IMG/VR virus record: IMGVR_UViG_3300009104_001210
Coordinates: 152,423-216,422 of that record
Strand: one strand, 5' to 3'
DNA length: 64,000 nucleotides
Numbering within the stretch: the first letter of the stretch is position 1; each line of letters opens with the position of its first letter. Position numbers and translations under genes: made by a program. Positions 7,765 through 43,786 of the stretch are shown here, piece after piece. Below the pieces are notes generated by a model. The model saw only the letters and a list, made by a program, of their open reading frames with translations, did no database searches and had not been told where the DNA came from.

Positions 7765-9204
7765 GTGTGTGGCATAGCAGGTATTTATAGTCATAGGTCT
7801 GTAGCACCAGAATTGTATGAGTGTATAGTTCATTTACAACATAGGGGACAAGATGCCGCAGGGATGATGACATATGATGAACGTATGCACAAACATAAAG
7901 GATTGGGATTAGCTAGAGACGTATTTACAAAAAATAATATATCTTTACTTAAAGGTAATGTTGGTATTTCACATAATAGATATCCTACACATGGAGAGTT
8001 TGGTCATGGTGAGATACAACCCGTATGGACTTCCGTACCATATGGAATAGCAATAGCACATAATGGACAGATAACAAACTATGATGAATTAGTAGAAGAA
8101 GTTACACAAAAGGAAAAGAGATATCTTAATACCACAAGTGATACTGAAGTTTTATTACATATATTAGCAAATGAATTAGATAAGAATGGAATACCAAAAA
8201 CTTCAGAAGAGTTTTTTAATCATTTATGTGAGGCAGTTAGTACTATATTTACAAAAGTTAAAGGGGCTTATTCTGTTACAGGTATTATTGTTGGAAAAGG
8301 ATTAATTGTTTTTAGAGATCCACGAGGTATTAGACCATTAGTTAAAGGTGAAAGAGATGATAACGGTAAAAAGGAGTATATCTTTTCATCAGAAAATACT
8401 ATGTTTTATTCATTAGGTTATGAACCAAAGGGTAATGTATTACCTGGAGAACTTATTTACATAGATGAAAGTGGTAAGTATTTTAGCAAACGATTAGTTA
8501 AGGAAGAATTTAATCCTTGTATATTTGAGTATGTATATTTTTCACGACCAGATGCAGTACTGAATGATGTAGGTGTGTATCGTTCAAGATTGAGAATGGG
8601 TCAGAATTTAGCATATGCATGGATGAAGAAGTATCCATATATAGTACCTGATATAGTTATACCTGCACCGAGTACGGCAAATACCGCCGCATTATCATTT
8701 GCTCATGAAATAGATGTTAGATATTCAGAAGGATTGTATAAGAATCCGTTTGTTGGTAGAACATTTATTATGCCAGGACAAGAAGAACGTAAAAGTTCTG
8801 TTAAACATAAACTCGTACCACAAGATACAGAGATACGAGATAAGAAAGTATTAATAGTAGATGATAGCATTGTTCGTGGTAATACAAGTAAAGAGATAGT
8901 AAGAATGGTAAAAGATTTTGGAGCAAAAGAAGTGTATTTTGTTAGTGCTTGTCCACCAATAAAACACCCTTGTTATTATGGTGTTGATATGCCAACTAAA
9001 GAGGAATTAATTGCTGGAATTAATAAAATAGATACTATTAAAAAAGATTTAGGAGTTGATATTTTACTATATCAAGAGATAGATGATTTAGTTGAAGCAG
9101 TAACACGAAGAGGTGATCATCATATAGAGAATCCATGTATGGCTTGTCTTGATGGACACTATGTAGTTAATGGAAGAAAAGTTCATGAATTGGTACTTAA
9201 TTAA
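7765..9204 (+). CDS. purF: amidophosphoribosyltransferase
   Basis: N-terminal CGIAG, QHRGQD, HNGQI, PCIFEYVYF, VDDSIVRGNTS, terminal CMAC. Confidence 0.96.
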   Translation: MCGIAGIYSHRSVAPELYECIVHLQHRGQDAAGMMTYDERMHKHKGLGLARDVFTKNNISLLKGNVGISHNRYPTHGEFGHGEIQPVWTSVPYGIAIAHNGQITNYDELVEEVTQKEKRYLNTTSDTEVLLHILANELDKNGIPKTSEEFFNHLCEAVSTIFTKVKGAYSVTGIIVGKGLIVFRDPRGIRPLVKGERDDNGKKEYIFSSENTMFYSLGYEPKGNVLPGELIYIDESGKYFSKRLVKEEFNPCIFEYVYFSRPDAVLNDVGVYRSRLRMGQNLAYAWMKKYPYIVPDIVIPAPSTANTAALSFAHEIDVRYSEGLYKNPFVGRTFIMPGQEERKSSVKHKLVPQDTEIRDKKVLIVDDSIVRGNTSKEIVRMVKDFGAKEVYFVSACPPIKHPCYYGVDMPTKEELIAGINKIDTIKKDLGVDILLYQEIDDLVEAVTRRGDHHIENPCMACLDGHYVVNGRKVHELVLN

Positions 9205-9704
9205 TGATTAATAAGATAATGATTGTAGCGCACCCTGATGATGAAGCACTATTTGGTGGCGCTGAATTATTATCACACCCAAAAGAATATAAAGTTGTAG
9301 TAGTAGATGAATATCACAATGATGTTAGACAAAAAGAGTTTAAGGATTCCATGCAATTTATAGGAATTACAGATTTTGAACATTGGACAGGTTATAAAGG
9401 TGGAGAAGATTATCATAGAGAAAAACTTATTTATGAGTTATTGAGAGTATTGAGAGAAAAAAAATGGGAAAAGATTGTAACTCATAATAGAGCAGGTGAA
9501 TATGGTCACCCAAGACATAGAGCATTGCATGATATATTAAATCATTTAAGACCTGAAATACTATGGCAGTTTGATAAAGGTAAAGAAAGATTACCACAAG
9601 ATTTATTAATTAAGAAAAGAGATTTATTAAAAGTATATGGAAGCCAAAGAGATGTTTTAGATTGGTTTAGTCCCTGGTACGAGAAAATAACGAAGGTAAA
9701 TTGA
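9204..9704 (+). CDS. PIG-L/LmbE family deacetylase
   Basis: AHPDDE and GEYGHPRH motifs. Confidence 0.85.
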   Translation: MINKIMIVAHPDDEALFGGAELLSHPKEYKVVVVDEYHNDVRQKEFKDSMQFIGITDFEHWTGYKGGEDYHREKLIYELLRVLREKKWEKIVTHNRAGEYGHPRHRALHDILNHLRPEILWQFDKGKERLPQDLLIKKRDLLKVYGSQRDVLDWFSPWYEKITKVN

Positions 9705-10741
9705 TGAGAAGAGCATTAGCATATGATGACATAAATATTACACCTAAATATTCAGATGTGGAACATAGAGACGACATAAATATTACTACAAGATTTACTA
9801 AGAAAACTTTATTAGATATACCAATTGTATCTTCACCTATGGATACTATTACTGGATTTGATATGGCTTTTGCTATGATGGTGTTGGGTGGAGTTGGTGT
9901 TGTACATAGATTTAATACTATTGAAGAACAATCATTGATAATGAATCAGTTACATACTGAAAAGTATGATCATTGTGAATTACCATTATCTGCAGCTATT
10001 GGAGTTACAGGGGATTATTTAGAAAGGGCACAAGAATTAATTAAGAACGGATGTAATGTTCTACTTATAGATGTAGCGCATGGACATCATAAATTAGTAG
10101 GAGAAGCAATTGAAGAGGTCAAAACCAAGTTATCAGGAGTTGAAATCATTGCGGGATCAGTTGCGACAGGAGAAGCGTGTGAATACTTATGTGAAAAAGG
10201 AGCGGACTCGATTAGAGTCGGAATTGGAAATGGAAGTTTATGTGAAACGAGAATTAGAACGGGTGTCGGAATCCCTCAAGTGTCTGCTCTCATTGATTGC
10301 GTCGCCGTTGCTGATAGGTTTGATGTTCCTATTATTGGTGATGGTGGGATCCGTAATGTTGGTGATGTGTGTAAAGGACTTGCTTGTGGGGCTGACTCGA
10401 TTATGTTGGGCTCCCTGTTATCAGGTACTAAAGAAACTCCAGGCACGATTGAAAAAATAGGCCAATGGCCGAATGAAATGTTACATAAAAAATATAGAGG
10501 TTCAGCATCATTGGACTCTAAAAAATCAAGAGGGGATAATAAAAATGTCGAAGGTAATCACAAAGTTATACCATACAAAGGGAAGGTCAAAAGAATTATA
10601 CAAGATATACAAGAGGGAATTCGTAGTTCTTTCAGCTATGTTGGTGCTAACAATTTTCCTGAGTTTTATTCTAAAGTAGAGTTAATAGAAGTTACAAGAG
10701 CAGGAAATATTGAAGGTATGCCACACCTTCTTAATACTTAA
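9701..10741 (+). CDS. IMP dehydrogenase/GMP reductase family, CBS-less (GMP reductase more likely)
   Basis: SSPMDT, IDVAHGH, VGIGNGSLCET, YRGSAS...KNVEG (GuaC-like flap). Confidence 0.85.
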   Translation: MMRRALAYDDINITPKYSDVEHRDDINITTRFTKKTLLDIPIVSSPMDTITGFDMAFAMMVLGGVGVVHRFNTIEEQSLIMNQLHTEKYDHCELPLSAAIGVTGDYLERAQELIKNGCNVLLIDVAHGHHKLVGEAIEEVKTKLSGVEIIAGSVATGEACEYLCEKGADSIRVGIGNGSLCETRIRTGVGIPQVSALIDCVAVADRFDVPIIGDGGIRNVGDVCKGLACGADSIMLGSLLSGTKETPGTIEKIGQWPNEMLHKKYRGSASLDSKKSRGDNKNVEGNHKVIPYKGKVKRIIQDIQEGIRSSFSYVGANNFPEFYSKVELIEVTRAGNIEGMPHLLNT

Positions 10742-10747
10742 TAATAT

Positions 10748-11182
10748 GGGGCTGAATGGTTTCGACAGATGCTATTTGATAATATAGTGCAACGGAGTTT
10801 GAGTAAGACTTGCTATAAAAGACTCACAAACCCAAAATGGCGATAAATCGCTACAAGGGTTGGAAATTGATTGGCATTTAGCCAATACCGAACAGATGTT
10901 TGACACTTATGTTGAACCTGCAAGGGCTTCCCAACCAACTTACGCATACGCATAAGTTACTGAGTTACCTAACACTCGGTCATAAAATGAGTTAGGTGGT
11001 AGGATGGTTGGTATATGTCTTTGAGTAGGAATTAGACGATAAAGAAACCTATCAGTTAAACTCATCTGAGTAAATGAGGTATGGTGGGTTGTTAGTTGAC
11101 TACCGATTTGGAAACTAACTAAGTTGTAAATGACTATTTATTAAAAGTAGACTGGACGCGGGTTCGAATCCCGCCAGCTCCA
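10748..11182 (+). ncRNA. ssrA: tmRNA
   Basis: 5' GGGGCTGAATGGTTTCGAC; 3' T-arm GCGGGTTCGAATCCCGC plus CAGCTCCA (G3:U70); internal tag ORF ending YAYA-TAA; CCA not encoded. Confidence 0.95.
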
Positions 11183-11202
11183 CTAAAATTGAGGAGAATA
11201 TT

Positions 11203-11445
11203 ATGAGAGGGAGAACCGATCTAATAGACGCATTAACAAAATACTTTGAAGGCTGTATTGCTAAGCACAAAGTTAATATTGATAACTTGTTAGATAATCA
11301 TGTAGCTTTAGCAGAACATCCTGATATTATTGACACACTTGATAAAGAAGTTGATATAATGTCTAACTACGAAGATAAGTTGAGTGTTTTACAAAAATAT
11401 TTTGTTGTTGAAGAAACGAATAAAAAAGAACTATTAAAGGATTAA
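11203..11445 (+). CDS. hypothetical phage protein
   Basis: GAGGAG RBS; ORF track. Confidence 0.6.
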   Translation: MRGRTDLIDALTKYFEGCIAKHKVNIDNLLDNHVALAEHPDIIDTLDKEVDIMSNYEDKLSVLQKYFVVEETNKKELLKD

Positions 11446-11446
11446 T

Positions 11447-11671
11447 ATGAAGCATATTATTGCAAAGAGAGTTCCACCTGGAGATAGATGGTCTATCGAA
11501 GGAGATGAAGTTGTTCACTCAACACTTACAGATTGTCTTAATTCTATTTTTATGGTAAATGGTTCTACACGATTTGATATAGATGCTAAGGCTGGAGAAA
11601 TTTATACAGACGATGGTGTAGTTAAACCTGAACCAATCAAGAAGTATAGTTTGTATGGTGAAGAGATGTAA
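11447..11671 (+). CDS. hypothetical protein
   Basis: ORF track; abuts neighbours. Confidence 0.55.
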   Translation: MKHIIAKRVPPGDRWSIEGDEVVHSTLTDCLNSIFMVNGSTRFDIDAKAGEIYTDDGVVKPEPIKKYSLYGEEM

Positions 11672-11909
11672 TCTTATGAAAGAAAATACAGTATATAATC
11701 ATTGGGATAATCTTGTAATGGTTAGAACTAATGAAAATTTTATAAATGTTATATGTCATAAAGAAGATCAAGTTCAACCAGTATTAGATAGAATGTCTAC
11801 TGATTGTTGTATTCTATCTGAATATGAAGAGTGGGATGAAGGTGAAGATGTGAAATGGATATTAACGTTTAGATTATTGGAAGAACACGAAACAATTCAT
11901 AGTAACTAA
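11655..11909 (+). CDS. hypothetical protein
   Basis: ORF track; true start may be a downstream ATG. Confidence 0.5.
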   Translation: MVKRCNLMKENTVYNHWDNLVMVRTNENFINVICHKEDQVQPVLDRMSTDCCILSEYEEWDEGEDVKWILTFRLLEEHETIHSN

Positions 11910-12653
11910 ATGATAAATCATAAACATAAGTTTATTTTTGTACATATACCACATACTGCAGGAACAAGTATAGAAGAGGCTTTTGGTTGGTATATACCAA
12001 ATGAATCAAAGGAAATTACTAATGAAGAGTTTGCATTAATTAAAGATAGACATTTAACAGGCGCACAGAGTAAAAGAAAATATAAAAAATATTGGGATGA
12101 TTATTTTGTATTTACAATTATAAGGAATCCATTTGATTATTTAGTTTCTAGTTGGGCAAGTTCTTCTGATTATATAGATGTTAAGAATAGGTATGCTAGT
12201 TATGGTAAATATTTGGGTGATGAAATAATATATAAAAGACGTGAACGACGATTTAGTTCAAGTTCTGATAGAGACTTATTGGAAAGAATGGGGCTTAGTA
12301 TAGATAAAATTTATTTTAAAGATTATGTAAATGCTTGTATAGATTATAAAAGAAATTTGAATCAAACAAATATGTTAGGTGATTTAGGTAGATATGATTT
12401 TATTGGTAAGTTTGAAGATATAGAAAATAGTTGGCAATATATTTGTAAAGAACTTGGAGTAGAAATAATATTAGGAAACTCTAATCCAACATTTAATTTG
12501 AAGAAAAAGCATTATAGTCATTGGTATACAAAAGATATAGAGTTAATAGATAAAAGTATTCCAATACTTGATGATGAATTAATAGATAGAGTTGCAGATT
12601 ATTGTTCAAGAGATTTAGAAACATTTGATTATAAGTTCGATTATGGATTATGA
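11910..12653 (+). CDS. Sulfotransfer_2 family sulfotransferase
   Basis: FIFVHIPHTAGTSI (5'-PSB) and IIRNPFDYLVS (3'-PB). Confidence 0.85.
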   Translation: MINHKHKFIFVHIPHTAGTSIEEAFGWYIPNESKEITNEEFALIKDRHLTGAQSKRKYKKYWDDYFVFTIIRNPFDYLVSSWASSSDYIDVKNRYASYGKYLGDEIIYKRRERRFSSSSDRDLLERMGLSIDKIYFKDYVNACIDYKRNLNQTNMLGDLGRYDFIGKFEDIENSWQYICKELGVEIILGNSNPTFNLKKKHYSHWYTKDIELIDKSIPILDDELIDRVADYCSRDLETFDYKFDYGL

Positions 12654-13117
12654 AGAGTACGCCAAGCAATAAAGAAATTGGTTTTTTTAAACAGTTATAT
12701 TCAGAAGAACCACATAGTTGGGTTAATCCAATGTTCATTTCACGAAGCGATTGGCCACCACCTCAAGATTGGTTAGATGAAGCGCCACATTTAAATCATA
12801 AAATGATACATAAAAGAGCTTCAGTTTGTTTATGTGTTTGGGAAAGATTTGGTGAAGTAACAAATCGTGCACTTATAGATTACTTTAAATTAATAATACC
12901 ACACGTTCATTTACCATTAGACTTAGATGGTTTTATGAAAATAGTAGATGGTAGACATAGATTAATAGCATATAAAGAATTAGATATAATGTGTCCTGTT
13001 TATATAGGTAGAAAAAGAGTGAGATATGGTACTTGTTGGCAAAAAGGACTTGCTTATAATGATGGAACAGTTGATAAGAATGTAAGACATAGAAGTGGAT
13101 ATTATGATCTTAAATAA
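12650..13117 (+). CDS. ParB/sulfiredoxin-like domain protein
   Basis: IVDGRHRL motif. Confidence 0.5.
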   Translation: MKSTPSNKEIGFFKQLYSEEPHSWVNPMFISRSDWPPPQDWLDEAPHLNHKMIHKRASVCLCVWERFGEVTNRALIDYFKLIIPHVHLPLDLDGFMKIVDGRHRLIAYKELDIMCPVYIGRKRVRYGTCWQKGLAYNDGTVDKNVRHRSGYYDLK

Positions 13118-13820
13118 TGAATATAAATTTATTTTTATACATATCCCAAAAAATGCTGGCACTTCTTTGAGAAGTAATTTGTGTAGATTAAGTGGTATGA
13201 AACAACCGTACACTTTTGAAGAAAAAGCGTTTGCACGTTTATGTACACATACTAAACCATGTGATTGTAAAAAGGATGGCGTCTTATCAGGTAGACATAT
13301 TAGGGCTATTACATTACGAGATGAAAAAGAAATAGATAATTGGAATGATTTGTATAAGTTTGCATTTGTAAGAAATCCATATGATAGAATGGTATCATTC
13401 TGGGCATTCTATAGAAACATAGGAACATCTATGACAAATGTTAGAAGGTCAGCAGAAATGATGTCTTTTGATGATTGGGTTAAATATTTAAGAAAGAAAT
13501 CATTTGCCAAAATGGGAGAGCATCCTGAATCACTTGTTCCACCTTGGCGGTGGCCACAAGTATCTTGGATTGAAAAGGATGGTAAACAGATAATAGATTT
13601 TGTAGGTAGATACGAAAATTTACAGGAAGATTTTGAATACATATGTAAACATATTGGTTTAGATAAAGATAGTTCTTTGTGGAAAGGACATGAACAATTA
13701 GAAGAATTTAATAAATCAGGTAGATTAAAAGATTATAGACAATACTATACGGAAGAATCAAAGAAGATAGTTGGTTGGTGGTTTAAAAGAGATTTGGAAT
13801 TATTTGATTATTCCTTTTAA
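13104..13820 (+). CDS. Sulfotransfer_2 family sulfotransferase
   Basis: FIFIHIPKNAGTSL, FVRNPYDRMVS, FVGRYENLQEDF. Confidence 0.88.
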   Translation: MILNNEYKFIFIHIPKNAGTSLRSNLCRLSGMKQPYTFEEKAFARLCTHTKPCDCKKDGVLSGRHIRAITLRDEKEIDNWNDLYKFAFVRNPYDRMVSFWAFYRNIGTSMTNVRRSAEMMSFDDWVKYLRKKSFAKMGEHPESLVPPWRWPQVSWIEKDGKQIIDFVGRYENLQEDFEYICKHIGLDKDSSLWKGHEQLEEFNKSGRLKDYRQYYTEESKKIVGWWFKRDLELFDYSF

Positions 13821-13823
13821 TAT

Positions 13824-13895
13824 GGCCCCATCGTCTAATGGTGAGGACGTCGCCCTTTCAAGGCGGAGATATGGGTTCGACTCCCGTTGGGGCTA
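13824..13895 (+). tRNA. tRNA-Glu(TTC)
   Basis: Acceptor GGCCCCA/TGGGGCT; anticodon loop CT-TTC-AA; T-loop TTCGACT. Confidence 0.92.
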
Positions 13896-13896
13896 C

Positions 13897-13979
13897 GGGC
13901 AGGTAGCAAAGCGGTTAAATGCACCAAACCGTAAGTTTGGCGTCGTGAGACTACGGTGGTTCGAATCCATCCCTGCCCT
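13897..13979 (+). tRNA. tRNA-Tyr(GTA), atypical (C33, U73)
   Basis: Acceptor GGGCAGG/CCTGCCC; CCAAA-CCGTAAG-TTTGG anticodon arm; long variable arm; TTCGAAT T-loop. Confidence 0.8.
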
Positions 13980-13980
13980 C

Positions 13981-14053
13981 GGGGCTGTAGCTCATTTGGG
14001 AGAGCGCTTCCCTTGCACGGAAGAGGCAGCAGGTTCGATTCCTGTCAGCTCCA
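13981..14053 (+). tRNA. tRNA-Ala(TGC)
   Basis: GGGGCTG/CAGCTCC with G3:U70; loop CT-TGC-AC. Confidence 0.93.
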
Positions 14054-14054
14054 C

Positions 14055-14648
14055 ATGAAAAATCTATCTAGATCTGAAATAAGAGAAATAAAGAATAACC
14101 AATCAGAGTTGTATATGGAAAATGATAACTTTAAAGTTATTATACCATATACACATGATGCAGTTAAGATATATGGTAAAGGTACTAGTTGGTGTGTTTC
14201 TTGGGCAAAAGACGAAGACTATCAGTTTTATAATAAAACAGGTAAAATTCTTTTAATACTTAAAAAGAATGTTCATATTAAAGATAATACTGAAATAGAT
14301 GATGTGTGTTATAAAGTATCTATGTGGATGCCATATCAAAAATATTTGCCACTATATAGAAATTTTGGAAAAGGTGGTATAGAAGATATAGCTAAAAGAT
14401 ATGAGTCCGATAAAGAGTTATATAAAAGCGTATTAAATGGTTATGTAAATTCGGTTGATGGTATTACTATTCATAAAATAACAGCAGATTTTGAATATTA
14501 TGATGCTGATGATGCGCATTGTTTTATGCCTGTAAAGTATATAGAAGGAGATAAAGTAGTTTGCATAGATAGAGATTGGGAATTAGATTGGGAAATATTT
14601 GATAGTATAAGATATAAGTATGAATATGAGTGGCAATTTGAAGGATAA
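14055..14648 (+). CDS. hypothetical jumbo-phage protein (YGxGTxWC motif)
   Basis: Real start ATG 14055, after tRNA-Ala; KIYGKGTSWCVS. Confidence 0.6.
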   Translation: MKNLSRSEIREIKNNQSELYMENDNFKVIIPYTHDAVKIYGKGTSWCVSWAKDEDYQFYNKTGKILLILKKNVHIKDNTEIDDVCYKVSMWMPYQKYLPLYRNFGKGGIEDIAKRYESDKELYKSVLNGYVNSVDGITIHKITADFEYYDADDAHCFMPVKYIEGDKVVCIDRDWELDWEIFDSIRYKYEYEWQFEG

Positions 14649-14652
14649 TAAT

Positions 14653-14726
14653 GTGCTGGTGCCGGAGTGGTCTAACGGGGTGGGTTGCAAACCCATTATT
14701 CACAGGTTCGAATCCTGTTCAGCACT
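14653..14726 (+). tRNA. tRNA-Cys(GCA)
   Basis: GTGCTGG/TCAGCAC acceptor; loop TT-GCA-AA; U73. Confidence 0.9.
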
Positions 14727-14741
14727 CATAACTAAGGAGAA

Positions 14742-14849
14742 ATACCAATGTAATATACAACACTAAATATAAGATTAGGGTTTAGCAGTACCAATATATA
14801 AACTGTCGGTGTTTAAAGTACACCACAAAATTTAGTGTACGGATGGTAT
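14742..14849 (+). ncRNA. unclassified structured intergenic element
   Basis: Nested helices ATACCA/TGGTAT, ACACTAAAT/ATTTAGTGT, GCAGT/ACTGT, GGTGT/ACACC. Confidence 0.4.
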
Positions 14850-14879
14850 CTAAAGAGGGACGGAGGCGGGAAAAAATTA

Positions 14880-14952
14880 GCCACTTTAGCTCAGTTGGTA
14901 GAGCAGCTCACTTGTAATGAGCAGGTCCTCAGTTCGAGTCTGAGAAGTGGCT
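14880..14952 (+). tRNA. tRNA-Thr(TGT)
   Basis: GCCACTT/AAGTGGC acceptor; loop CT-TGT-AA. Confidence 0.93.
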
Positions 14953-14962
14953 CAAAAATAAT

Positions 14963-15990: not shown

Positions 15991-17157
15991 ATGAATAAAG
16001 TTGTAGTCAAAATCGAAATGTCGGGAAACCGATATAACGCTTTTGATTCTGATGGTAATAAATACACATCAGAAATTGGTACTGGAACACGTAAAAGAGC
16101 ATTTGAACAAGGTATGGCTCTTGAACGTCGTGAAGGTAAAACTGGTAAAACCTATTGGTGGAAAGTTCCAATGAGTGAATTTGAAGTATCATCAGTTCCT
16201 GAGTTTGATGTTTCTTCGGTAGAAGTACCTGAAGAACATGGTGAGATGTTGAATTTCATTCATAGTTCATATAAACTGAAACCTAAAGGTTTGGTTATGA
16301 AGGAACTGAAGTGGAAATATTTAGTTCGTTCAGGTGTTAGAGGTAAGAACATTCTAATGACAGGTCCTGCCGGATGTGGTAAAACATTGGCAGCTAAGTC
16401 GTTAGTTAACGCACTTGATCGTCCTGATTTTTACTTTAATTTGGGTGCGACTCAAGACCCTCGTTCCTCTCTAATTGGTAATACTCACTTTGATAAGTCA
16501 AAGGGTACTTACTTTTCAGAATCACTTTTTGTGAAGGCGATTTCGACGCCTAACTCAGTTATTCTGTTAGATGAGTTAAGTAGGGCTCACCCTGACGCTT
16601 GGAATATTTTGATGACAGTTCTTGATGAAGGTCAGAGATATCTAAGGTTGGATGAGGCTGACGGGCAGGCGACGATTAAAGTTGCAAGTGGTGTTACTTT
16701 TGTAGCGACAGCGAACATTGGTAATGAATACACTTCTACAAGAGTTATGGATAAAGCCTTAATGGATAGATTCATTATTGTAGAAATGGATGTTCTAAAC
16801 TCTGATGAGGAATATGGATTGTTACAATATATGTTTCCTCATGTGGATCCTGAGTTATTGAAAGCAGTTGCTGAGATAGCTCACGCATCAAGGTCAGAAT
16901 CAAAATCAGAAGCAGGTAGGATTTCAAGTGGAATTTCGACAAGAACTTCAGTTGAAATGTCTGGTCTTCTGTATGATGGTTTTGGATTAGATGAAGCGTC
17001 TGAAGTTAGTATCTATCCTCAGTATTCTGAAGATGGTGGAATGGAATCTGAAAGAACTTACATTAGACAGTTAGTACAGAAGTTCGTTTCTGATGGTAGT
17101 TCTGAAGACCTCTTTAATGAAGACGAAATAGAATCTACAGAAGATTCTGATTCTTAA
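15991..17157 (+). CDS. MoxR/CbbQ-like AAA+ ATPase
   Basis: Walker A GPAGCGKT, Walker B LLDELSRA, FVATAN, DRF. Confidence 0.88.
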   Translation: MNKVVVKIEMSGNRYNAFDSDGNKYTSEIGTGTRKRAFEQGMALERREGKTGKTYWWKVPMSEFEVSSVPEFDVSSVEVPEEHGEMLNFIHSSYKLKPKGLVMKELKWKYLVRSGVRGKNILMTGPAGCGKTLAAKSLVNALDRPDFYFNLGATQDPRSSLIGNTHFDKSKGTYFSESLFVKAISTPNSVILLDELSRAHPDAWNILMTVLDEGQRYLRLDEADGQATIKVASGVTFVATANIGNEYTSTRVMDKALMDRFIIVEMDVLNSDEEYGLLQYMFPHVDPELLKAVAEIAHASRSESKSEAGRISSGISTRTSVEMSGLLYDGFGLDEASEVSIYPQYSEDGGMESERTYIRQLVQKFVSDGSSEDLFNEDEIESTEDSDS

Positions 17158-24579: not shown

Positions 24580-25528
24580 AGATATTTTATATGAAGATCA
24601 AGCGTGGAAAACTGTTAAGTTTTTATTAGATGTAAAAAAAATATCTAATGAGGTTGTAGATATGCACAATATAGAATCTATAAAGCAATTAAATGTTTCA
24701 AGTGATGATATATGTTTTGCTAGATTTGGTCATCATTTTGATGATAAGATAGCAACTAATAAAGCATATGATGTATTAACTCAAAAATTTAATAAAATAT
24801 ATCCTTCAAAAGACGCATATTATTATTATGATGATAAATTAAAGCAATATGAATTTATGTTAGAAAATGATATACCTTGTTTGAAAACATATTATGTAGG
24901 TAGTAAAGAAGAGATAGAAAAATTAAATATAAAATTTCCTATAGTTACTAAAAAAACTTGGGGGGCTGGAACTGAACAAGTTAATAAGTGGGATGATTAT
25001 GAATCTATTGTTGATAATAAAGATACTCGAAGTTGGACAGGGGGATCTATATTTCCATGTTTAGTTCAAGAATATAAAGATGTAGATTATGATATTAGAG
25101 TTAGAATTTTAAACTCTAAAGTTTTCTTTACTAAAAGAATGCACGAATTTAAAACAAAAAATAAAGATAATTTTCCATATGGTACAAAAGAGATTCTTAA
25201 AAAAGATAGAATAAAATATCATTTACCACCATATGAAGTTCCTGTAGCATTACCAATAAATGATTTAGCAGAAGTAGAAGATATTATACCTATAGTAGAA
25301 AAATTACATAAGATTCAAAATGAAAAATTGAATAGTAATTTTGTGGTGTGGGATATTCTTAGAACAAATGAAGGAATAAAAATTCTTGAATTTAGTCATG
25401 TTACAGTATATAAAAGTTTTCCACAAATTTATTATGATATAGAATATAAAGAAGCAAATAAATTAACAATAAAAAATCGTGAACATTTTTTTTATTTGTA
25501 TAACGAAATATTAAAAGGATTAATATGA
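24560..25528 (+). CDS. RimK-like ATP-grasp ligase
   Basis: DKLKQYEFM, PIVTKKTWGAG, LVQEY...YDIRV, VWDIL...ILEFS. Confidence 0.75.
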   Translation: MKFYLHKDILYEDQAWKTVKFLLDVKKISNEVVDMHNIESIKQLNVSSDDICFARFGHHFDDKIATNKAYDVLTQKFNKIYPSKDAYYYYDDKLKQYEFMLENDIPCLKTYYVGSKEEIEKLNIKFPIVTKKTWGAGTEQVNKWDDYESIVDNKDTRSWTGGSIFPCLVQEYKDVDYDIRVRILNSKVFFTKRMHEFKTKNKDNFPYGTKEILKKDRIKYHLPPYEVPVALPINDLAEVEDIIPIVEKLHKIQNEKLNSNFVVWDILRTNEGIKILEFSHVTVYKSFPQIYYDIEYKEANKLTIKNREHFFYLYNEILKGLI

Positions 25529-27090
25529 AGAAAGTTATTATAGTTGGTGGTGGATTTGCAGGTTACTTAACAGCGTTGTTTTTAAATAAAAAATTTCCTA
25601 AATTAAAAATTGATATAATAAAATCATCAGATAAAGAACAAATTTCTGCTGGAGAACAAACAGGCAAAGAACAACTACAATTGTTTTTTGAATCATTAGG
25701 AATTGAAGAAACTGAATGGTTTAGTAGAACAAAATCTTTTTTAAAAATAGGTAATTCTTTTGTTGGGTGGGGAAACCGTGAAAATTTTGATCCTCGAGTT
25801 GGTGGACCAGATGTAGTTAATCATAGTTTTGTAATGGAAAATAAATTATTACCTTTACTTAGGAATGGTGGTGGTATGAAATCCGTAAAGGATTCTATGA
25901 AATATAATGATAAGTTACATACTGAATTATATCAAAATAGTTTTTTAGAAACACCCATAGATAATACGGATGATTATATAGATAGTTTTAAAAAACACTT
26001 TAAAAATAGTTTTTTTAATAGAAAGAATAATAGAGCCATAGCTCATATGCATGATTGGTTAGAGATAGGTAAATTTATAGAAACTAAGTTTGATGATAAT
26101 GTTAAAATAATTACTGATCATATAACTGATGTGGTTGTAGATAAAAAAAATAATACTATAGAATATCTTGTTAATAAAGATAAAGAAAAGATTAAAGCAG
26201 ATCACTACGTAGATTGTACAGGTATTAGTAGAATTTTGATTTCTAAACTTAGTAAAGTTGTAGATATTAGTGATGAATATCCTGTAAATAGTGCCGTATT
26301 TGGTCCAGTAGAATATATAGATAGAACTAAAGAGATGGTGCCAACCTTATATACTACTGCTTTTAAAAATGGTTATTCATTTAAAACACCATTACAACAT
26401 AGGATAGGAACAGGATATGTCTATTCAGATAAGTATATTAGTAAAGATGAAGCAATAGATGAGATAAATGATTATTGGGATGGTAGATTTAAGTCAGATC
26501 AAGTTAATCATTTAAAATGGACTCCATCTTATGTAGTTAAACCTTTTCAGAAAAATTGTAGCGCTGTAGGATTAGCAGGACAATTTGATTGTCCAATGGA
26601 ATCTACAGTATTTACTCAGATATCAACTGCTCTTCAACAATTAGGAAATTATTTAAATAGAGATAATAAATTATTATACATGAATCGTTCTGATATAAGA
26701 GATGAAGATATGTTAAATTATTGTAATACTTGGACTGAATATACTTTTCATAATACAAGACATTTTAAACAAATGATGTTTTATACTACAAATAGAGATG
26801 ATAGCGAATTTTGGAAGAATATTAAAACACTTAATTATTCTGATATTTTTTATAAAAAATTAAGTTTCTTTTTAGACAATTCATTTGATTATATAATAGA
26901 AAATAGAAATAAGTTTCCTGATTATACTCCACCAACAAATTTTAATATTAATGAAGATAGATTTTGGAGAGTATATCAAAAAGGATTTAAAGGATATTTT
27001 GATTATATGGGAATAAGGGGTGTAGGACATAGTATGATATTAGATGTTCATAATTGGTTAATGATTCTTGCGTATAAAAAATACATTTAA
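25525..27090 (+). CDS. tryptophan-halogenase (PrnA)-like flavoprotein
   Basis: IVGGGFAG, KIGNSFVGW, YVDCTG, PLQHRIGTGYVYS, PMEST. Confidence 0.8.
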   Translation: MKKVIIVGGGFAGYLTALFLNKKFPKLKIDIIKSSDKEQISAGEQTGKEQLQLFFESLGIEETEWFSRTKSFLKIGNSFVGWGNRENFDPRVGGPDVVNHSFVMENKLLPLLRNGGGMKSVKDSMKYNDKLHTELYQNSFLETPIDNTDDYIDSFKKHFKNSFFNRKNNRAIAHMHDWLEIGKFIETKFDDNVKIITDHITDVVVDKKNNTIEYLVNKDKEKIKADHYVDCTGISRILISKLSKVVDISDEYPVNSAVFGPVEYIDRTKEMVPTLYTTAFKNGYSFKTPLQHRIGTGYVYSDKYISKDEAIDEINDYWDGRFKSDQVNHLKWTPSYVVKPFQKNCSAVGLAGQFDCPMESTVFTQISTALQQLGNYLNRDNKLLYMNRSDIRDEDMLNYCNTWTEYTFHNTRHFKQMMFYTTNRDDSEFWKNIKTLNYSDIFYKKLSFFLDNSFDYIIENRNKFPDYTPPTNFNINEDRFWRVYQKGFKGYFDYMGIRGVGHSMILDVHNWLMILAYKKYI

Positions 27091-40199: not shown

Positions 40200-40776
40200 T
40201 TGTTTCAAAGAAGACAATCCAGTTATAAATAAAAAACTGAGGAAGGTTTCAATAGATGAAGGACTTAAAATTGCCGAGATTTTATTCACTACACTCAATG
40301 AGAGGAAAGATGGAATTGGTCTTGCGGCTAACCAAGTGGGTATTGATGCTAGTGTTGCTGTGGTTAATGTTAGGGAGCCGCTTATTCTAATTAATCCTGT
40401 TATTAAAGAACAATGGGATGAGATAGATTATTATGAGGGTTGTTTAAGTTATCCAAAAAAAGGTGTACACACTAAACGATATAAAAATGTAGTTATTAAA
40501 ACTGAACAAGAAGAATGTGATTGGTATTTTAGTGGTGCAGAAAATCCGTCAAAGGGAACAGGTAGTTGGGAAGAATTAGATAATAATAAACAAGATGAGG
40601 AATTACGAATACTTGAATCAGTTTGTATTCAACATGAAATTGATCATTTAAATGGTGTATCTTGTATTGATAAAGCAATAGATATTACTGTTAAAGTTGA
40701 AAAGAAGCCAGGTAGAAATGAACCTTGTCATTGTGGTAGTGGTAAGAAATATAAAAAATGTTGTATAAAAAAATGA
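40183..40776 (+). CDS. def: peptide deformylase fused to a SEC-C motif
   Basis: GIGLAANQVG, EGCLS, QHEIDH; C-terminal GRNEPCHCGSGKKYKKCC. Confidence 0.93.
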   Translation: MQKIINCFKEDNPVINKKLRKVSIDEGLKIAEILFTTLNERKDGIGLAANQVGIDASVAVVNVREPLILINPVIKEQWDEIDYYEGCLSYPKKGVHTKRYKNVVIKTEQEECDWYFSGAENPSKGTGSWEELDNNKQDEELRILESVCIQHEIDHLNGVSCIDKAIDITVKVEKKPGRNEPCHCGSGKKYKKCCIKK

Positions 40777-42798: not shown

Positions 42799-43087
42799 AG
42801 GTCATAAGTGGTTGATAGAACAAAGATTAAAGTTAGGTAAAAATATTTTGATAGGAATAAGAGAAATAGAAAATCCTAAATATACGCCAAGAGAAATTAT
42901 GATACAAATATTTCATGAGTTTCCAAATGAAGTAAATGATGGAACGATTGATTTTGTAGAATTACCTGATATAGAGTCTATTAATTATGGAAGAGAAGTT
43001 GGATACGATATAATTGAGCATGAACCACCTGAAGATATAAAAAGAATCTCGGGAACAAAAATAAGGAATCAACGTGGAGATAAATGA
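42755..43087 (+). CDS. HxGH-class nucleotidyltransferase (cytidyltransferase-like)
   Basis: FIGKWQPWHKGH; ISGTKIR. Confidence 0.8.
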   Translation: MKYSLFIGKWQPWHKGHKWLIEQRLKLGKNILIGIREIENPKYTPREIMIQIFHEFPNEVNDGTIDFVELPDIESINYGREVGYDIIEHEPPEDIKRISGTKIRNQRGDK

Positions 43088-43276
43088 AATTAAAGAAAAA
43101 TTAGAAGAAGCTTTGGAAGCAGAAAATTGGGATATTATAATTGAAATAATTGGTGATCTTGAAACACAAGAGCATTATGTAAACCCATATGACGCTTATG
43201 ATGAAGATGAAATATAGAAGAATAATTGGCAAATTAGAAATGTTAAATGATAATTATTAATAATAAGGAGTTAAAT

Positions 43277-43786
43277 ATGAACAATGTTAAGTGGTTCACA
43301 ATATTAGCTATGTCAATGTTAATCGTTAATATAGTTGGACTAGAAAAAATATTAAGTTTATATAAAGAGAGGGAGTTAAAAGTTATTGAATCATTAGTGA
43401 TGAAAAGTGATTCTTTAACACAAGAACTTAGGAAATACGAGGAGTATGGAGTGGCTGTTAAAGTAACTATGTACCAACCTGTTCGTTATCAGACCGATTC
43501 TACACCGAACATTCTCGCAGATGGAACGCGCATTCGAGCACAAAGTGCTTCAGATTACAAATATATAGCGGTGAGTAGAAATCTTCTGAAACGATGGGGT
43601 GGTTTTTTAGATTATGGTGATTTTGTACTTTTAAAAGGAACTGATAATAAAGATGGTGTATATCAAGTTAGAGATACTATGGCAGCACGTTGGGTAAATC
43701 GTATTGATATTTTGGAATCAGTACACGTTGATCCATATATGTATCCTAAAGCTGAGATAGTTAGATTAAATTGGACTATGAATTAA
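43277..43786 (+). CDS. membrane-anchored 3D-domain (MltA-like) peptidoglycan hydrolase
   Basis: N-terminal TM; VTMY, TADG-like LADG, IAVSR, VRDTM, RIDIL. Confidence 0.7.
   Translation: MNNVKWFTILAMSMLIVNIVGLEKILSLYKERELKVIESLVMKSDSLTQELRKYEEYGVAVKVTMYQPVRYQTDSTPNILADGTRIRAQSASDYKYIAVSRNLLKRWGGFLDYGDFVLLKGTDNKDGVYQVRDTMAARWVNRIDILESVHVDPYMYPKAEIVRLNWTMN

What the first reader, a model, noticed from the sequence alone, without database searches (positions are those of the whole stretch)
10748..11182. Phage tmRNA with a very long (38-codon) tag ending YAYA
The frame ending at TAA 10953 is open back to an AAAT-GGC resume-like context at 10839, giving GDKSLQGLEIDWHLANTEQMFDTYVEPARASQPTYAYA. Typical tags are about 10-15 aa and end in AA. 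The 435-nt length fits an expanded mRNA domain. The tag could redirect rescued proteins to a different protease, block degradation, or add a functional peptide.
Basis: partly seen in the sequence, partly recalled or inferred. Interest (0 to 1): 0.7.

Follow-up and report, generated by a model that had tools for sequence, protein, structure and literature searches.

The report
Phage tmRNA with 38-codon tag
A large marine phage carries a ribosome-rescue RNA (tmRNA) that encodes a 38-residue tag, about three times the usual length, and both ends of the tag are conserved in over a hundred related phage sequences, so it probably does more than act as a plain destruction signal.

Summary
Window 10748-11182 (+) is a one-piece tmRNA: Rfam RF00023 scores 77.5 bits against a cut-off of 47. 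It lies in a complete 216-kb marine phage genome. ARAGORN misses it.

I collected 104 distinct homologues from viral contigs. The other two frames close after a median of 5 and 1 codons.

The resume codon at 10839 (GGC) fits every test I could apply:
- A at -4 and T at -1 in 104/104.
- 12 nt after a covarying pseudoknot 1.
- The same position in the Rfam alignment.
- In phase with a peptide under purifying selection (dN/dS 0.17 for GLxIDWHLA and 0.21 for QPxYAYA(A); 0.7-2.0 in the other frames).

Length changes in the tag are all multiples of three. Three covarying helices fold the coding region, and one starts exactly at the resume codon. Metatranscriptome contigs cover only the tmRNA and end at 10747/10748.

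The phage genome has no SmpB, ClpP, Lon or SspB. The tag has three parts: a conserved motif, a variable acidic linker, and an ssrA-like end. Degradation is inferred, and the role of the motif is unknown.

This is a new variant of a known kind.

The parts
10748..11182 (+). One-piece tmRNA gene, from the 5' G to the discriminator A. CCA is not encoded (the next bases are CTA).
   Evidence: Rfam RF00023 at 77.5 bits over the full model. RNA-library contigs end at 10747/10748 and cover only this gene.
10748..10754 (+). Acceptor stem, 5' strand. It pairs with 11175-11181, and G10750-U11179 is the G3-U70 alanine identity pair.
   Evidence: RNAalifold on A1: 7 pairs, with the G-U pair kept in 11/11 sequences.
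10766..10793 (+). Helix 2, 5' strand. It pairs with 11123-11154.
   Evidence: RNAalifold on A1, with many pairs changed on both sides.
10795..10826 (+). Pseudoknot 1: stem 1 is 10795-10798 with 10808-10811, and stem 2 is 10800-10804 with 10822-10826.
   Evidence: In 78 sequences, 7 of the 9 pairs show changes on both sides. The observed covariation beats 500/500 shuffles and all slid controls.
10827..10838 (+). Single-stranded 12-nt spacer before the resume codon, with A10835 at -4 and T10838 at -1.
   Evidence: A at -4 and T at -1 in 104/104 sequences. The rule comes from PMC2481249.
10839..10841 (+). Resume codon GGC (Gly).
   Evidence: The Rfam alignment places the consensus resume codon here. 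In the family the first codon is GGC 87, AGC 11, GAC 3, GGT 3.
10839..10852 (+). Hairpin that starts at the resume codon: 5-bp stem 10839-10843 with 10848-10852, loop UAAA.
   Evidence: 98.7% of cells are paired in 78 sequences. G-C changes to A-U, C-G changes to U-A, and the closing pair alternates G-U and A-U. Divergent members have rebuilt stems.
10839..10955 (+). Tag reading frame: 38 codons plus TAA (10953-10955).
   Evidence: Open in 104/104 homologues; dN/dS and codon-phase tests support translation.
10857..10883 (+). Codons 7-15, the conserved peptide motif GLxIDWHLA.
   Evidence: The core GLx[I/V]DW[H/Q][L/F/M/I] is present in 57/57 sequences found without using the tag. dN/dS is 0.165 for codons 6-15. 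Parsimony steps over codons 10-15 are 17/1/49 by codon position.
10884..10931 (+). Codons 16-31, a variable acidic linker.
   Evidence: Length classes span 24-33 codons from D11 to the stop, all in frame. Mean net charge of the tags is -6.5.
10858..10865 (+). Long-range helix, 5' strand. It pairs with 10929-10936 and closes the middle of the reading frame.
   Evidence: Predicted on A1. On 104 sequences six pairs hold in 89-104, and the outer pair covaries A-U 59, C-G 21, G-U 7, G-C 5.
10932..10952 (+). Codons 32-38, QPTYAYA, an ssrA-like C-terminal end.
   Evidence: dN/dS is 0.21 against 1.8-2.0 in the other frames. The family ends in ...AA in 51 members and in ...[Y/F/N/T/S]A in 51.
10937..10958 (+). 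Helix 5: 10937-10942 with 10953-10958. The stop codon lies in the 3' strand.
   Evidence: RNAalifold. Thr ACT to Ser TCT is matched by GTT to GAT downstream.
10960..10997 (+). Pseudoknot 2: 10960-10965 with 10974-10979, and 10967-10973 with 10991-10997.
   Evidence: Read by eye from A1, with compensatory CTGAGT/ACTCGG to CTTGGGT/ACCCGAG. The second stem is also predicted.
11158..11174 (+). T-arm of the tRNA-like domain.
   Evidence: Five pairs, all with double changes in some sequences.

Best explanation
This is a working one-piece tmRNA of a 216-kb marine tailed phage. It is made as a stable RNA and probably cut at its 5' end by RNase P at G10748. It carries the G3-U70 pair that lets the host alanyl-tRNA synthetase charge it. 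Because the phage has no SmpB of its own, it must use the host's SmpB and EF-Tu to enter stalled ribosomes. Translation resumes at GGC 10839 and adds alanine plus 38 residues. The tag has three parts. Residues 7-15 form a strongly conserved motif, GLxIDWHLA. Next comes a variable, acidic, proline-rich linker of changing length. The end, QPxYAYA(A), resembles the ordinary ssrA degradation signal. The most likely outcome is that rescued, unfinished proteins are handed to a host AAA+ protease such as ClpXP. The long disordered tail would serve as an easy entry point, and the conserved motif as an extra recognition or tethering site. The RNA is shown to exist, and the frame, the resume codon, selection on the peptide and the folded coding region are supported by comparison. 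Charging, SmpB use, degradation and the role of the motif are inferred.
For: Identity:
- Rfam RF00023 scores 77.5 bits over the full model.
- The acceptor stem with G3-U70 is kept in 11/11, and the T-arm and helix 2 covary.
- Both stems of pseudoknot 1 covary.

Expression:
- Contigs from two metatranscriptomes of the source study cover 10747/10748-11053 and nothing in the flanking genes across 9700-12700.

Resume codon:
- The Rfam alignment places it at 10839.
- A at -4 and T at -1 occur in 104/104, matching the natural rule (PMC2481249).
- It lies 12 nt after pseudoknot 1.
- Two members have an in-frame stop two codons upstream, which bounds the start.

Translation of the whole frame:
- Frame 0 is open for 34-43 codons in 103/104; the other frames have medians of 5 and 1.
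- All ten length classes of the variable part are in frame.
- In 57 sequences found without using the tag, dN/dS is 0.165 for the motif and 0.21 for the C-terminal end, against 0.68-1.97 in shifted frames.
- On a tree built from the non-coding parts, changes at codon positions 1/2/3 are 17/1/49 for codons 10-15 (P = 3e-11), and only 10 of 61 codon changes alter the residue.

Host dependence:
- SmpB, ClpP, Lon and SspB are absent from the complete phage genome.

Tag nature:
- AlphaFold gives no structure (pLDDT 58.7).
- Mean net charge is -6.5.
- One member ends YALAA, like E. coli.
Against: - There is no direct evidence of trans-translation, charging or degradation.
- Codons 1-5 have dN/dS 0.73-0.84, so selection on the peptide cannot fix the first five codons. 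They are pinned only by the -4 A rule, the spacing from pseudoknot 1, in-frame 3-nt insertions and the Rfam alignment.
- Part of the conservation of the motif and of QP is at the RNA level, because GGUUGG pairs with CCAACC.
- A plain count of polymorphic sites by codon position was not significant. Only the tree-based count was.
- ARAGORN does not call the gene.
- The host is unknown.
- The RNA-library evidence comes from assembled contigs of small runs.
- Half of the family ends in ...YA and not ...AA, and one lineage has lost the stop codon.
Confidence: 0.8

Rival explanations
1. The tag is short. Translation resumes further downstream in the same frame, for example at the conserved Ala codon GCC 10881 (a 24-residue tag) or where ARAGORN starts it in relatives. 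The conserved stretch before that point would then be structural RNA only.
For: ARAGORN gives in-frame tags of 11-25 residues for 50 family members and for L201. GCN is the commonest resume codon (PMC1168896). The upstream stretch takes part in helices. Codons 1-5 show no selection on the peptide.
Against: ARAGORN's start points are not homologous between relatives. The base at -4 of GCC 10881 is T/C/A, not A, by direct reading of the alignment. Codons 10-15 change almost only at third positions or by Leu-synonymous first positions, in phase with the downstream frame (17/1/49 steps, P = 3e-11). The hairpin loop codon for Leu14 varies only among Leu and other hydrophobic codons. No stop occurs in the first 15 codons (10 in codon 1 to D11 plus the 3-nt insertions) in any of 104 sequences.
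Confidence: 0.08
2. The long tag is not a degradation signal. It protects rescued proteins, or it gives them a new activity or location.
For: Half of the family lacks the terminal AA. The conserved internal motif has no known counterpart in degradation tags. Other phage tmRNAs also have odd ends: Bxz1 ends ...AALV, and LR756508.1 ends ...PAAV by eye.
Against: The end Y-A-[Y/F/L]-A-(A) is close to YALAA, and one member has exactly YALAA. The C-terminal end is under purifying selection. The candidate host lineage uses ...AAA and ...AYA ends and has clpP-clpX. Giving random truncated proteins a new function is hard to justify.
Confidence: 0.12
3. The RNA is a decoy or a remnant. It could be an SmpB-titrating inhibitor like the TLD-only RNA of phage DS6A, or a piece of host ssrA picked up at an integration site, in which case its frame is not used.
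For: Phages are known to carry ssrA fragments and a TLD-only molecule (PMC4131195; PMC9004378).
Against: The gene is full length with all domains. More than 100 distinct viral copies keep the frame, the peptide and the helices. Apart from three short MAG contigs, no cellular genome among about 185,000 species holds the tag pattern.
Confidence: 0.03
4. The frame is an ordinary small gene translated from its own start codon, not by trans-translation.
For: Gene callers have called ORFs of 33-81 residues over these loci in public data.
Against: The only nearby ATG (10837) is out of frame, and it is ATA in many relatives. No conserved start codon or ribosome-binding site precedes codon 1. The frame sits inside a tmRNA between pseudoknot 1 and helix 5.
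Confidence: 0.02

Closest known systems
Mycoplasma tmRNA with an extended tag (27 residues in M. pneumoniae, ending ...AFA, recognised by Lon)
   Same: The tag is much longer than the 11 and 14 residues of E. coli and B. subtilis. It is rich in hydrophobic and aromatic residues, ends Y-A-x-A, and has determinants spread along its length (PMC8403727; PMC3985003).
   Different: This tag is 34-43 residues and phage-encoded. Its conserved motif GLxIDWHLA is unrelated to the Mycoplasma tag. Mycoplasmas lack ClpXP, whereas the candidate host lineage here has clpP-clpX. Recognition by Lon was not tested.
Mycobacteriophage Bxz1-type tmRNA
   Same: A one-piece tmRNA of about 435 nt in a large myovirus, next to a tRNA cluster, with a long acidic tag of 25 residues (listed in PMC4131195).
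   Different: There is no detectable sequence similarity (blastn against phages). The tag is 13 residues shorter, has no shared motif and ends ...AALV. ARAGORN calls it without trouble.
E. coli / Caulobacter ssrA tag with the SspB adaptor
   Same: Both have a two-site layout: an N-proximal site for a delivery factor and a C-terminal site for the unfoldase (PMC3985003).
   Different: No SspB is found in the phage or in the candidate host genomes. The two conserved sites are about 16-25 residues apart and not adjacent. No partner for the motif was found.
Two-piece tmRNAs of marine pelagimyophages and OM43 phage Melnitz
   Same: They are tmRNAs encoded by abundant marine myophages and are proposed to keep the hijacked translation machinery running or to recycle host protein (PMC9004378).
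   Different: Those are permuted two-piece RNAs of alphaproteobacterial type under a glutamine riboswitch. This one is one-piece, and that survey found only 2.5% of one-piece phage tmRNAs to be marine.
Plastid tmRNAs with long mRNA-like domains (up to 126 nt in Odontella sinensis)
   Same: The coding region is of comparable length (117 nt here including the stop), so this is near the top of the reported range without clearly exceeding it (PMC1168896).
   Different: Those are organellar RNAs undergoing reductive evolution. I did not compare their tags here.

Membership tests
tmRNA (Rfam RF00023, one-piece) | Covariance-model score above the curated gathering score over the full model | tested here: met
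   77.5 bits against 47, model positions 1-374. Family members score 57-103 bits.
tmRNA (Rfam RF00023, one-piece) | tRNA-like domain: a 7-bp acceptor stem joining the 5' and 3' ends, a G3-U70 pair, a T-arm and a discriminator A | tested here: met
   All pairs are present, G-U is kept in 11/11, and the T-arm covaries.
tmRNA (Rfam RF00023, one-piece) | Pseudoknot 1 shortly upstream of the resume codon | tested here: met
   Both stems are supported by double changes in 78 sequences. The spacer is 12 nt, against about 11 nt in E. coli (my knowledge).
tmRNA (Rfam RF00023, one-piece) | Resume-codon context: A at -4, a pyrimidine at -1, a purine at -3 | tested here: met
   A at -4 in 104/104, T at -1 in 104/104, a purine at -3 in 94/104. 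Rule from PMC2481249.
tmRNA (Rfam RF00023, one-piece) | A short reading frame ending at a stop codon in helix 5 | tested here: met
   The stop TAA lies in the 3' strand of a covarying 6-bp helix. The frame is 38 codons, far above the typical length.
tmRNA (Rfam RF00023, one-piece) | The tag ends in a hydrophobic, Ala-rich degradation signal (ALAA type) | tested here: inconclusive
   The window ends YAYA. The family ends ...AA in 51 members and ...xA in 51, and one member ends YALAA. Recognition by a protease was not tested.
tmRNA (Rfam RF00023, one-piece) | Present as a stable RNA | tested here: met
   RNA-library contigs cover only the gene and end at its 5' end. The caveat is that these are assembled contigs from small runs.
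tmRNA (Rfam RF00023, one-piece) | Alanylation, SmpB and EF-Tu binding, and tagging of stalled nascent chains | not testable with these tools
   There is no SmpB in the phage, so host factors would be needed.
Lon-directed extended tags (Mycoplasma type) | The host lacks ClpXP/ClpAP and the tag has co-evolved with Lon | tested here: inconclusive
   The host is unknown. The MAG lineage in which two phage-type contigs were binned has clpP and clpX, which argues against this type if that lineage is the host.
Adaptor-assisted (SspB-type) tags | A cognate adaptor that binds the N-proximal part of the tag | tested here: not met
   PF04386 is absent from the phage and from five candidate-host genomes. 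The commonest neighbour gene is a membrane-anchored protein of unknown function, not an adaptor.

The most novel reading that the evidence does not exclude
The tag is a phage-designed, three-part delivery signal. The invariant GLxIDWHLA motif would be a built-in tether to a host unfoldase domain, or to a still unknown phage or host factor. The acidic linker sets the spacing, and the YAYA(A) end engages the pore. Phage-rescued proteins would then outcompete the host's own short-tagged substrates, or go to a different fate. In parallel, the covarying hairpin that begins exactly at the resume codon would be a new frame-setting or gating element of trans-translation. Long acidic tags may be a general trait of phage tmRNAs: Bxz1 has 25 residues and LR756508.1 about 36.
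Probability: 0.3. Interest if true: 0.75.

Novelty: new variant of a known kind. Interest (0 to 1): 0.62.

Why it matters
tmRNA tags are usually treated as short degradation signals of 8 to about 15 residues, and the 27-residue mycoplasma tag is already called unusually long. This is an abundant, expressed family of marine phage tmRNAs whose tags are 34-43 residues. They have two separately conserved peptide modules and a coding region folded into three covarying helices. Three things follow.

First, the standard annotation tool misses half of these genes and truncates the tag in the rest. Surveys of phage tmRNAs therefore undercount them and misreport their tags.

Second, the family offers a natural test case for how the ribosome finds the resume codon when that codon is the first base of a stable hairpin.

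Third, it suggests that phages tune the fate of rescued proteins and do not merely top up the host's rescue capacity.

The tag also gives a concrete search target for marine metaproteomes: the tryptic peptide formed by tag residues 4-29.

Tried and rejected
- **ARAGORN as arbiter of the resume codon.** It finds nothing in the window even at lowered thresholds. On relatives it gives inconsistent truncated tags.
- **blastn of the tmRNA against 50,697 phage records.** No match.
- **A phage-encoded partner for the tag.** SmpB, ClpP, SspB and Lon are absent. The one AAA_2 hit (window 15991-17157) is a MoxR/CobS-type ATPase (AAA_5 plus CbbQ_C), not a Clp unfoldase.
- **The gene most often next to the tmRNA as an adaptor.** A protein of about 175 residues lies directly downstream in 65 of 91 loci. 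The window's copy has an N-terminal hydrophobic segment that looks like a membrane anchor, and the family has no known domain (phrog_21574). In this genome it lies 32 kb away at 43247-43786, so I dropped it as an adaptor candidate.
- **Naming the host.** Three MAGs hold phage-type contigs. The tools give their lineage no name. Atlas look-ups pointed weakly to Bacteroidota/Fidelibacterota for one protein and nowhere for ArgS. A relative's 16S 5' domain is 74-77% identical to E. coli.
- **AlphaFold of the tag.** Disordered.
- **Complex prediction of the tag with the ClpX zinc-binding domain of a candidate host.** The tool returned 'no answer', which counts neither for nor against binding.
- **Plain count of polymorphic sites by codon position.** Not significant. 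I replaced it with a tree-based count.
- **Profile search of 1.84 billion proteins with the tag.** It found only ORFs miscalled over tmRNA genes, plus a probably coincidental match to an FG-GAP/VCBS-type repeat.
- **Promoter and terminator scan.** Nothing above chance.

Full report
**What is there**

The Rfam tmRNA model matches window 10748-11185 (+) over its whole length, at 77.5 bits against a gathering score of 47. The window is the last 64 kb of a 216,422-bp IMG/VR virus record that CheckV rates as complete. The gene lies 6 nt after a GMP reductase gene (9701-10741). It is 2.6 kb upstream of a cluster of five tRNA genes. ARAGORN finds the tRNAs but not the tmRNA, even with lowered thresholds.

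**Relatives**

The neighbouring GMP reductase led to 14 viral loci, and ten of them carry a homologous tmRNA. I then ran two DNA-pattern scans of IMG/VR. One pattern lay inside the tag and one lay in the 3' part of the RNA, so the second was blind to the tag. An nhmmer profile recovered 141 full-length copies, 104 of them distinct and 399-448 nt long. Source runs are marine or seawater metagenomes. No record in a collection of 50,697 phage genomes matches at blastn sensitivity.

The closest cultured phages by baseplate protein are Microcystis phage Mel-JY01 (50% identity) and Flavobacterium phage immuto (43%). No tmRNA above the Rfam cut-off was found in either. A 484-kb uncultured phage (LR756508.1) does have one. 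By eye it carries a GGC-started frame of about 36 codons.

**Is the long frame translated?**

Several lines say yes.
The +1 and +2 frames close after a median of 5 and 1 codons.
- The variable middle comes in ten length classes, all multiples of three.
- I limited the next tests to the 57 distinct sequences reached without using the tag pattern. dN/dS is 0.165 for codons 6-15 and 0.21 for the last codons. The same nucleotides read in the other two frames give 0.68-1.97.
- On a tree built only from the non-coding parts of the RNA, parsimony changes at codon positions 1/2/3 are 17/1/49 for codons 10-15 (P = 3e-11), and only 10 of 61 codon changes alter the residue. The counts are 28/21/88 for codons 6-15 and 29/9/44 for the C-terminal codons.
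- A cruder count of polymorphic sites was not significant.
- The motif GLx[I/V]DW[H/Q][L/F/M/I] is present in 57/57.

**Where does translation resume?**

Five observations agree on 10839.
- The Rfam alignment sets the consensus resume codon on GGC 10839.
- A at -4 and T at -1 are invariant in 104/104, and -3 is a purine in 94. In natural tmRNAs the A at -4 (A86 in E. coli) is the most conserved and most important base for frame setting, -1 is C or U, and -3 is a purine (PMC2481249). No other codon in the first 15 has an A at -4 across the family (read).
- The codon lies 12 nt after pseudoknot 1, and both stems of that pseudoknot covary.
- Insertions between codon 1 and the motif are 3 nt long.
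- Two members have a stop two codons upstream.

Codons 1-5 show no selection on the peptide (dN/dS 0.73-0.84). The exact first codon therefore rests on RNA-level rules and not on the peptide. First codons in the family are GGC 87, AGC 11, GAC 3 and GGT 3. Gly, Ser and Asp are all known, if uncommon, resume residues (PMC1168896).

**A folded coding region**

Three helices lie inside the reading frame.
- A 5-bp hairpin begins with the first base of the resume codon (10839-10843 with 10848-10852, loop UAAA). It is paired in 98.7% of cells. It shows G-C to A-U and C-G to U-A double changes and a closing pair that alternates G-U and A-U. In divergent members both the stem and the peptide are rebuilt, for example GCGAGG/CCUUGC with one extra codon.
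- A long-range helix (10858-10865 with 10929-10936) joins the Gly-Leu codons of the motif to the Gln-Pro codons near the end. Its outer pair covaries A-U 59, C-G 21, G-U 7, G-C 5.
- Helix 5 (10937-10942 with 10953-10958) holds the stop codon. A Thr-to-Ser change is matched by a change downstream.

Some of the conservation of the peptide ends is therefore shared with RNA structure. The hairpin-loop and non-helical codons still vary only synonymously. In E. coli a helix around the resume codon has been predicted from energy alone, and strengthening it was proposed to block function (PMC1168896; PMC2481249). Here the helix starts at +1, leaves the upstream bases free, and has comparative support.

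**Expression**

Contigs from two small metatranscriptomes of the same study as the source sample cover 10747/10748 to 11030/11053. They cover nothing else between 9700 and 12700, and one contig ends exactly at 10748. That is what a stable, 5'-processed RNA would give. Contigs are not reads, though, and the 3' third is not covered. Other marine RNA runs hold relatives at 90-95% identity, again only over the tmRNA. No + strand terminator follows the gene, and promoter-like matches are below chance. Processing from a longer transcript is plausible.

**What the tag looks like**

It has three parts: a conserved motif at residues 7-15, a variable acidic Pro/Ser/Val/Tyr-rich linker, and QP[T/S]YA[Y/F/L]A(A). 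Mean net charge is -6.5 (range -9 to -3). Fifty-one tags end ...AA and 51 end ...xA, and one ends YALAA. AlphaFold with a 50-sequence alignment predicts no structure. A profile of the tag searched against 1.84 billion proteins finds only ORFs of 33-81 residues miscalled across tmRNA genes. The one long hit is an FG-GAP/VCBS-type repeat protein (GLLLDWQMANGT), which I take to be coincidence. The motif occurs nowhere else in the phage genome.

**Who acts on it?**

The phage has no SmpB, ClpP, Lon or SspB. Its one AAA_2-like protein is of the MoxR/CobS type. Host factors must therefore act.

The tag pattern occurs in only three cellular assemblies among about 185,000 species, each time on a short contig of a marine MAG. 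Each MAG also has its own ordinary tmRNA. Two of the MAGs belong to one lineage whose tags read ADYGYAAAA, ADYGYVAAA, ADNYGMAYA or ANNGQIAYA. These are short tags, some ending ...AYA like the phage tag. That lineage has a clpP-clpX operon and no SspB. This is a lead to the host, not a demonstration, because binning of short contigs is unreliable and the third MAG is unrelated. A complex prediction of the tag with that ClpX zinc-binding domain gave no answer.

**Comparison with known systems**

[quoted passage not shown] Reported mRNA-like domains span 48-126 nt (PMC1168896). At 117 nt with its stop, this one is near the top of that range. Bxz1 carries a 25-residue acidic tag and phage G a 13-residue one. 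Marine phage tmRNAs described so far are mainly two-piece (PMC9004378). I found no paper describing this family or its motif. That search covers open-access text only.

**Verdict**

The observation and the main interpretation are correct. The best-supported mechanism is ordinary trans-translation with host factors, adding an exceptionally long three-part tag whose end resembles a ClpXP-type signal. The function of the conserved internal motif and of the resume-codon hairpin is open, and these two features are what make the finding interesting.

Noticed in passing
window 13824-14953: Cluster of five tRNA genes (Glu-TTC, Tyr-GTA, Ala-TGC, Cys-GCA, Thr-TGT) 2.6 kb downstream of the tmRNA. The tRNA-Thr is 90-94% identical to tRNA-Thr genes of Vibrio and Aeromonas phages.
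   Followed up: partly
window 7765-10741 and 11910-13820: Metabolic genes flank the tmRNA: a PurF-like glutamine amidotransferase/phosphoribosyltransferase, a PIG-L family deacetylase, GMP reductase, and two Sulfotransfer_2 proteins. A tryptophan-halogenase-like gene lies at 25525-27090.
   Followed up: partly
window 43068-43786, compared with loci such as L130:1342-1863: In most relatives the tmRNA sits between a roughly 52-residue ORF (5-6 nt upstream, 55 loci) and a roughly 175-residue protein of unknown function (65 of 91 loci); the window's copy of the latter has an N-terminal hydrophobic segment. In this genome those two genes are adjacent with no tmRNA between them, and the tmRNA lies 32 kb away next to GMP reductase. 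The gene has therefore moved within the lineage.
   Followed up: partly
L145:2732-3319 and 40 other loci; own genome C1:192632-193105 (window about 40210-40683): A peptide deformylase with a C-terminal SEC-C zinc motif lies near the tmRNA in 41 related loci and is also present in this genome. With the tRNAs it forms a translation-related module.
   Followed up: no
L004:5155-5584, L005, L052, L102: One sublineage, seen in four loci from at least three contigs, has CAA in place of the TAA stop. Its tag runs 11 codons further, through helix 5 and into pseudoknot 2, and ends ...NTRT. A related ORF in public data (P0002) also reads through after YAYA.
   Followed up: no
P0001 (a 53-residue ORF from the protein library): A miscalled ORF holds two copies of the IDWHLAEYD motif in tandem. 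This suggests a tmRNA variant with a duplicated motif region.
   Followed up: no
L189:1501-1947 (LR756508.1, 484-kb uncultured phage): Its tmRNA scores 72 bits. ARAGORN gives it an implausible 8-residue tag. By eye, a GGC codon preceded by TAACT opens a 36-codon acidic frame ending ...KPAAV. Long tags may be common in large-phage tmRNAs.
   Followed up: partly
L198, L199, L218-L231 (MAG lineage of G002/G003): This unnamed lineage of small-genome marine bacteria has 9-residue tags: ADYGYAAAA, ADYGYVAAA, ADNYGMAYA, ADNGYIAAA and ANNGQIAYA. The tmRNA usually lies next to tRNA-Lys. Two of its MAGs contain a phage-type tmRNA contig.
   Followed up: partly
window 10937-10958, both strands: Because helix 5 is nearly palindromic, the reverse strand also reads ...TYAYA followed by a stop. 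I take this to be a by-product of the hairpin, not a second gene.
   Followed up: yes
window 15991-17157: A MoxR/CobS-type AAA+ ATPase (AAA_5 plus CbbQ_C) lies 5 kb downstream of the tmRNA.
   Followed up: yes
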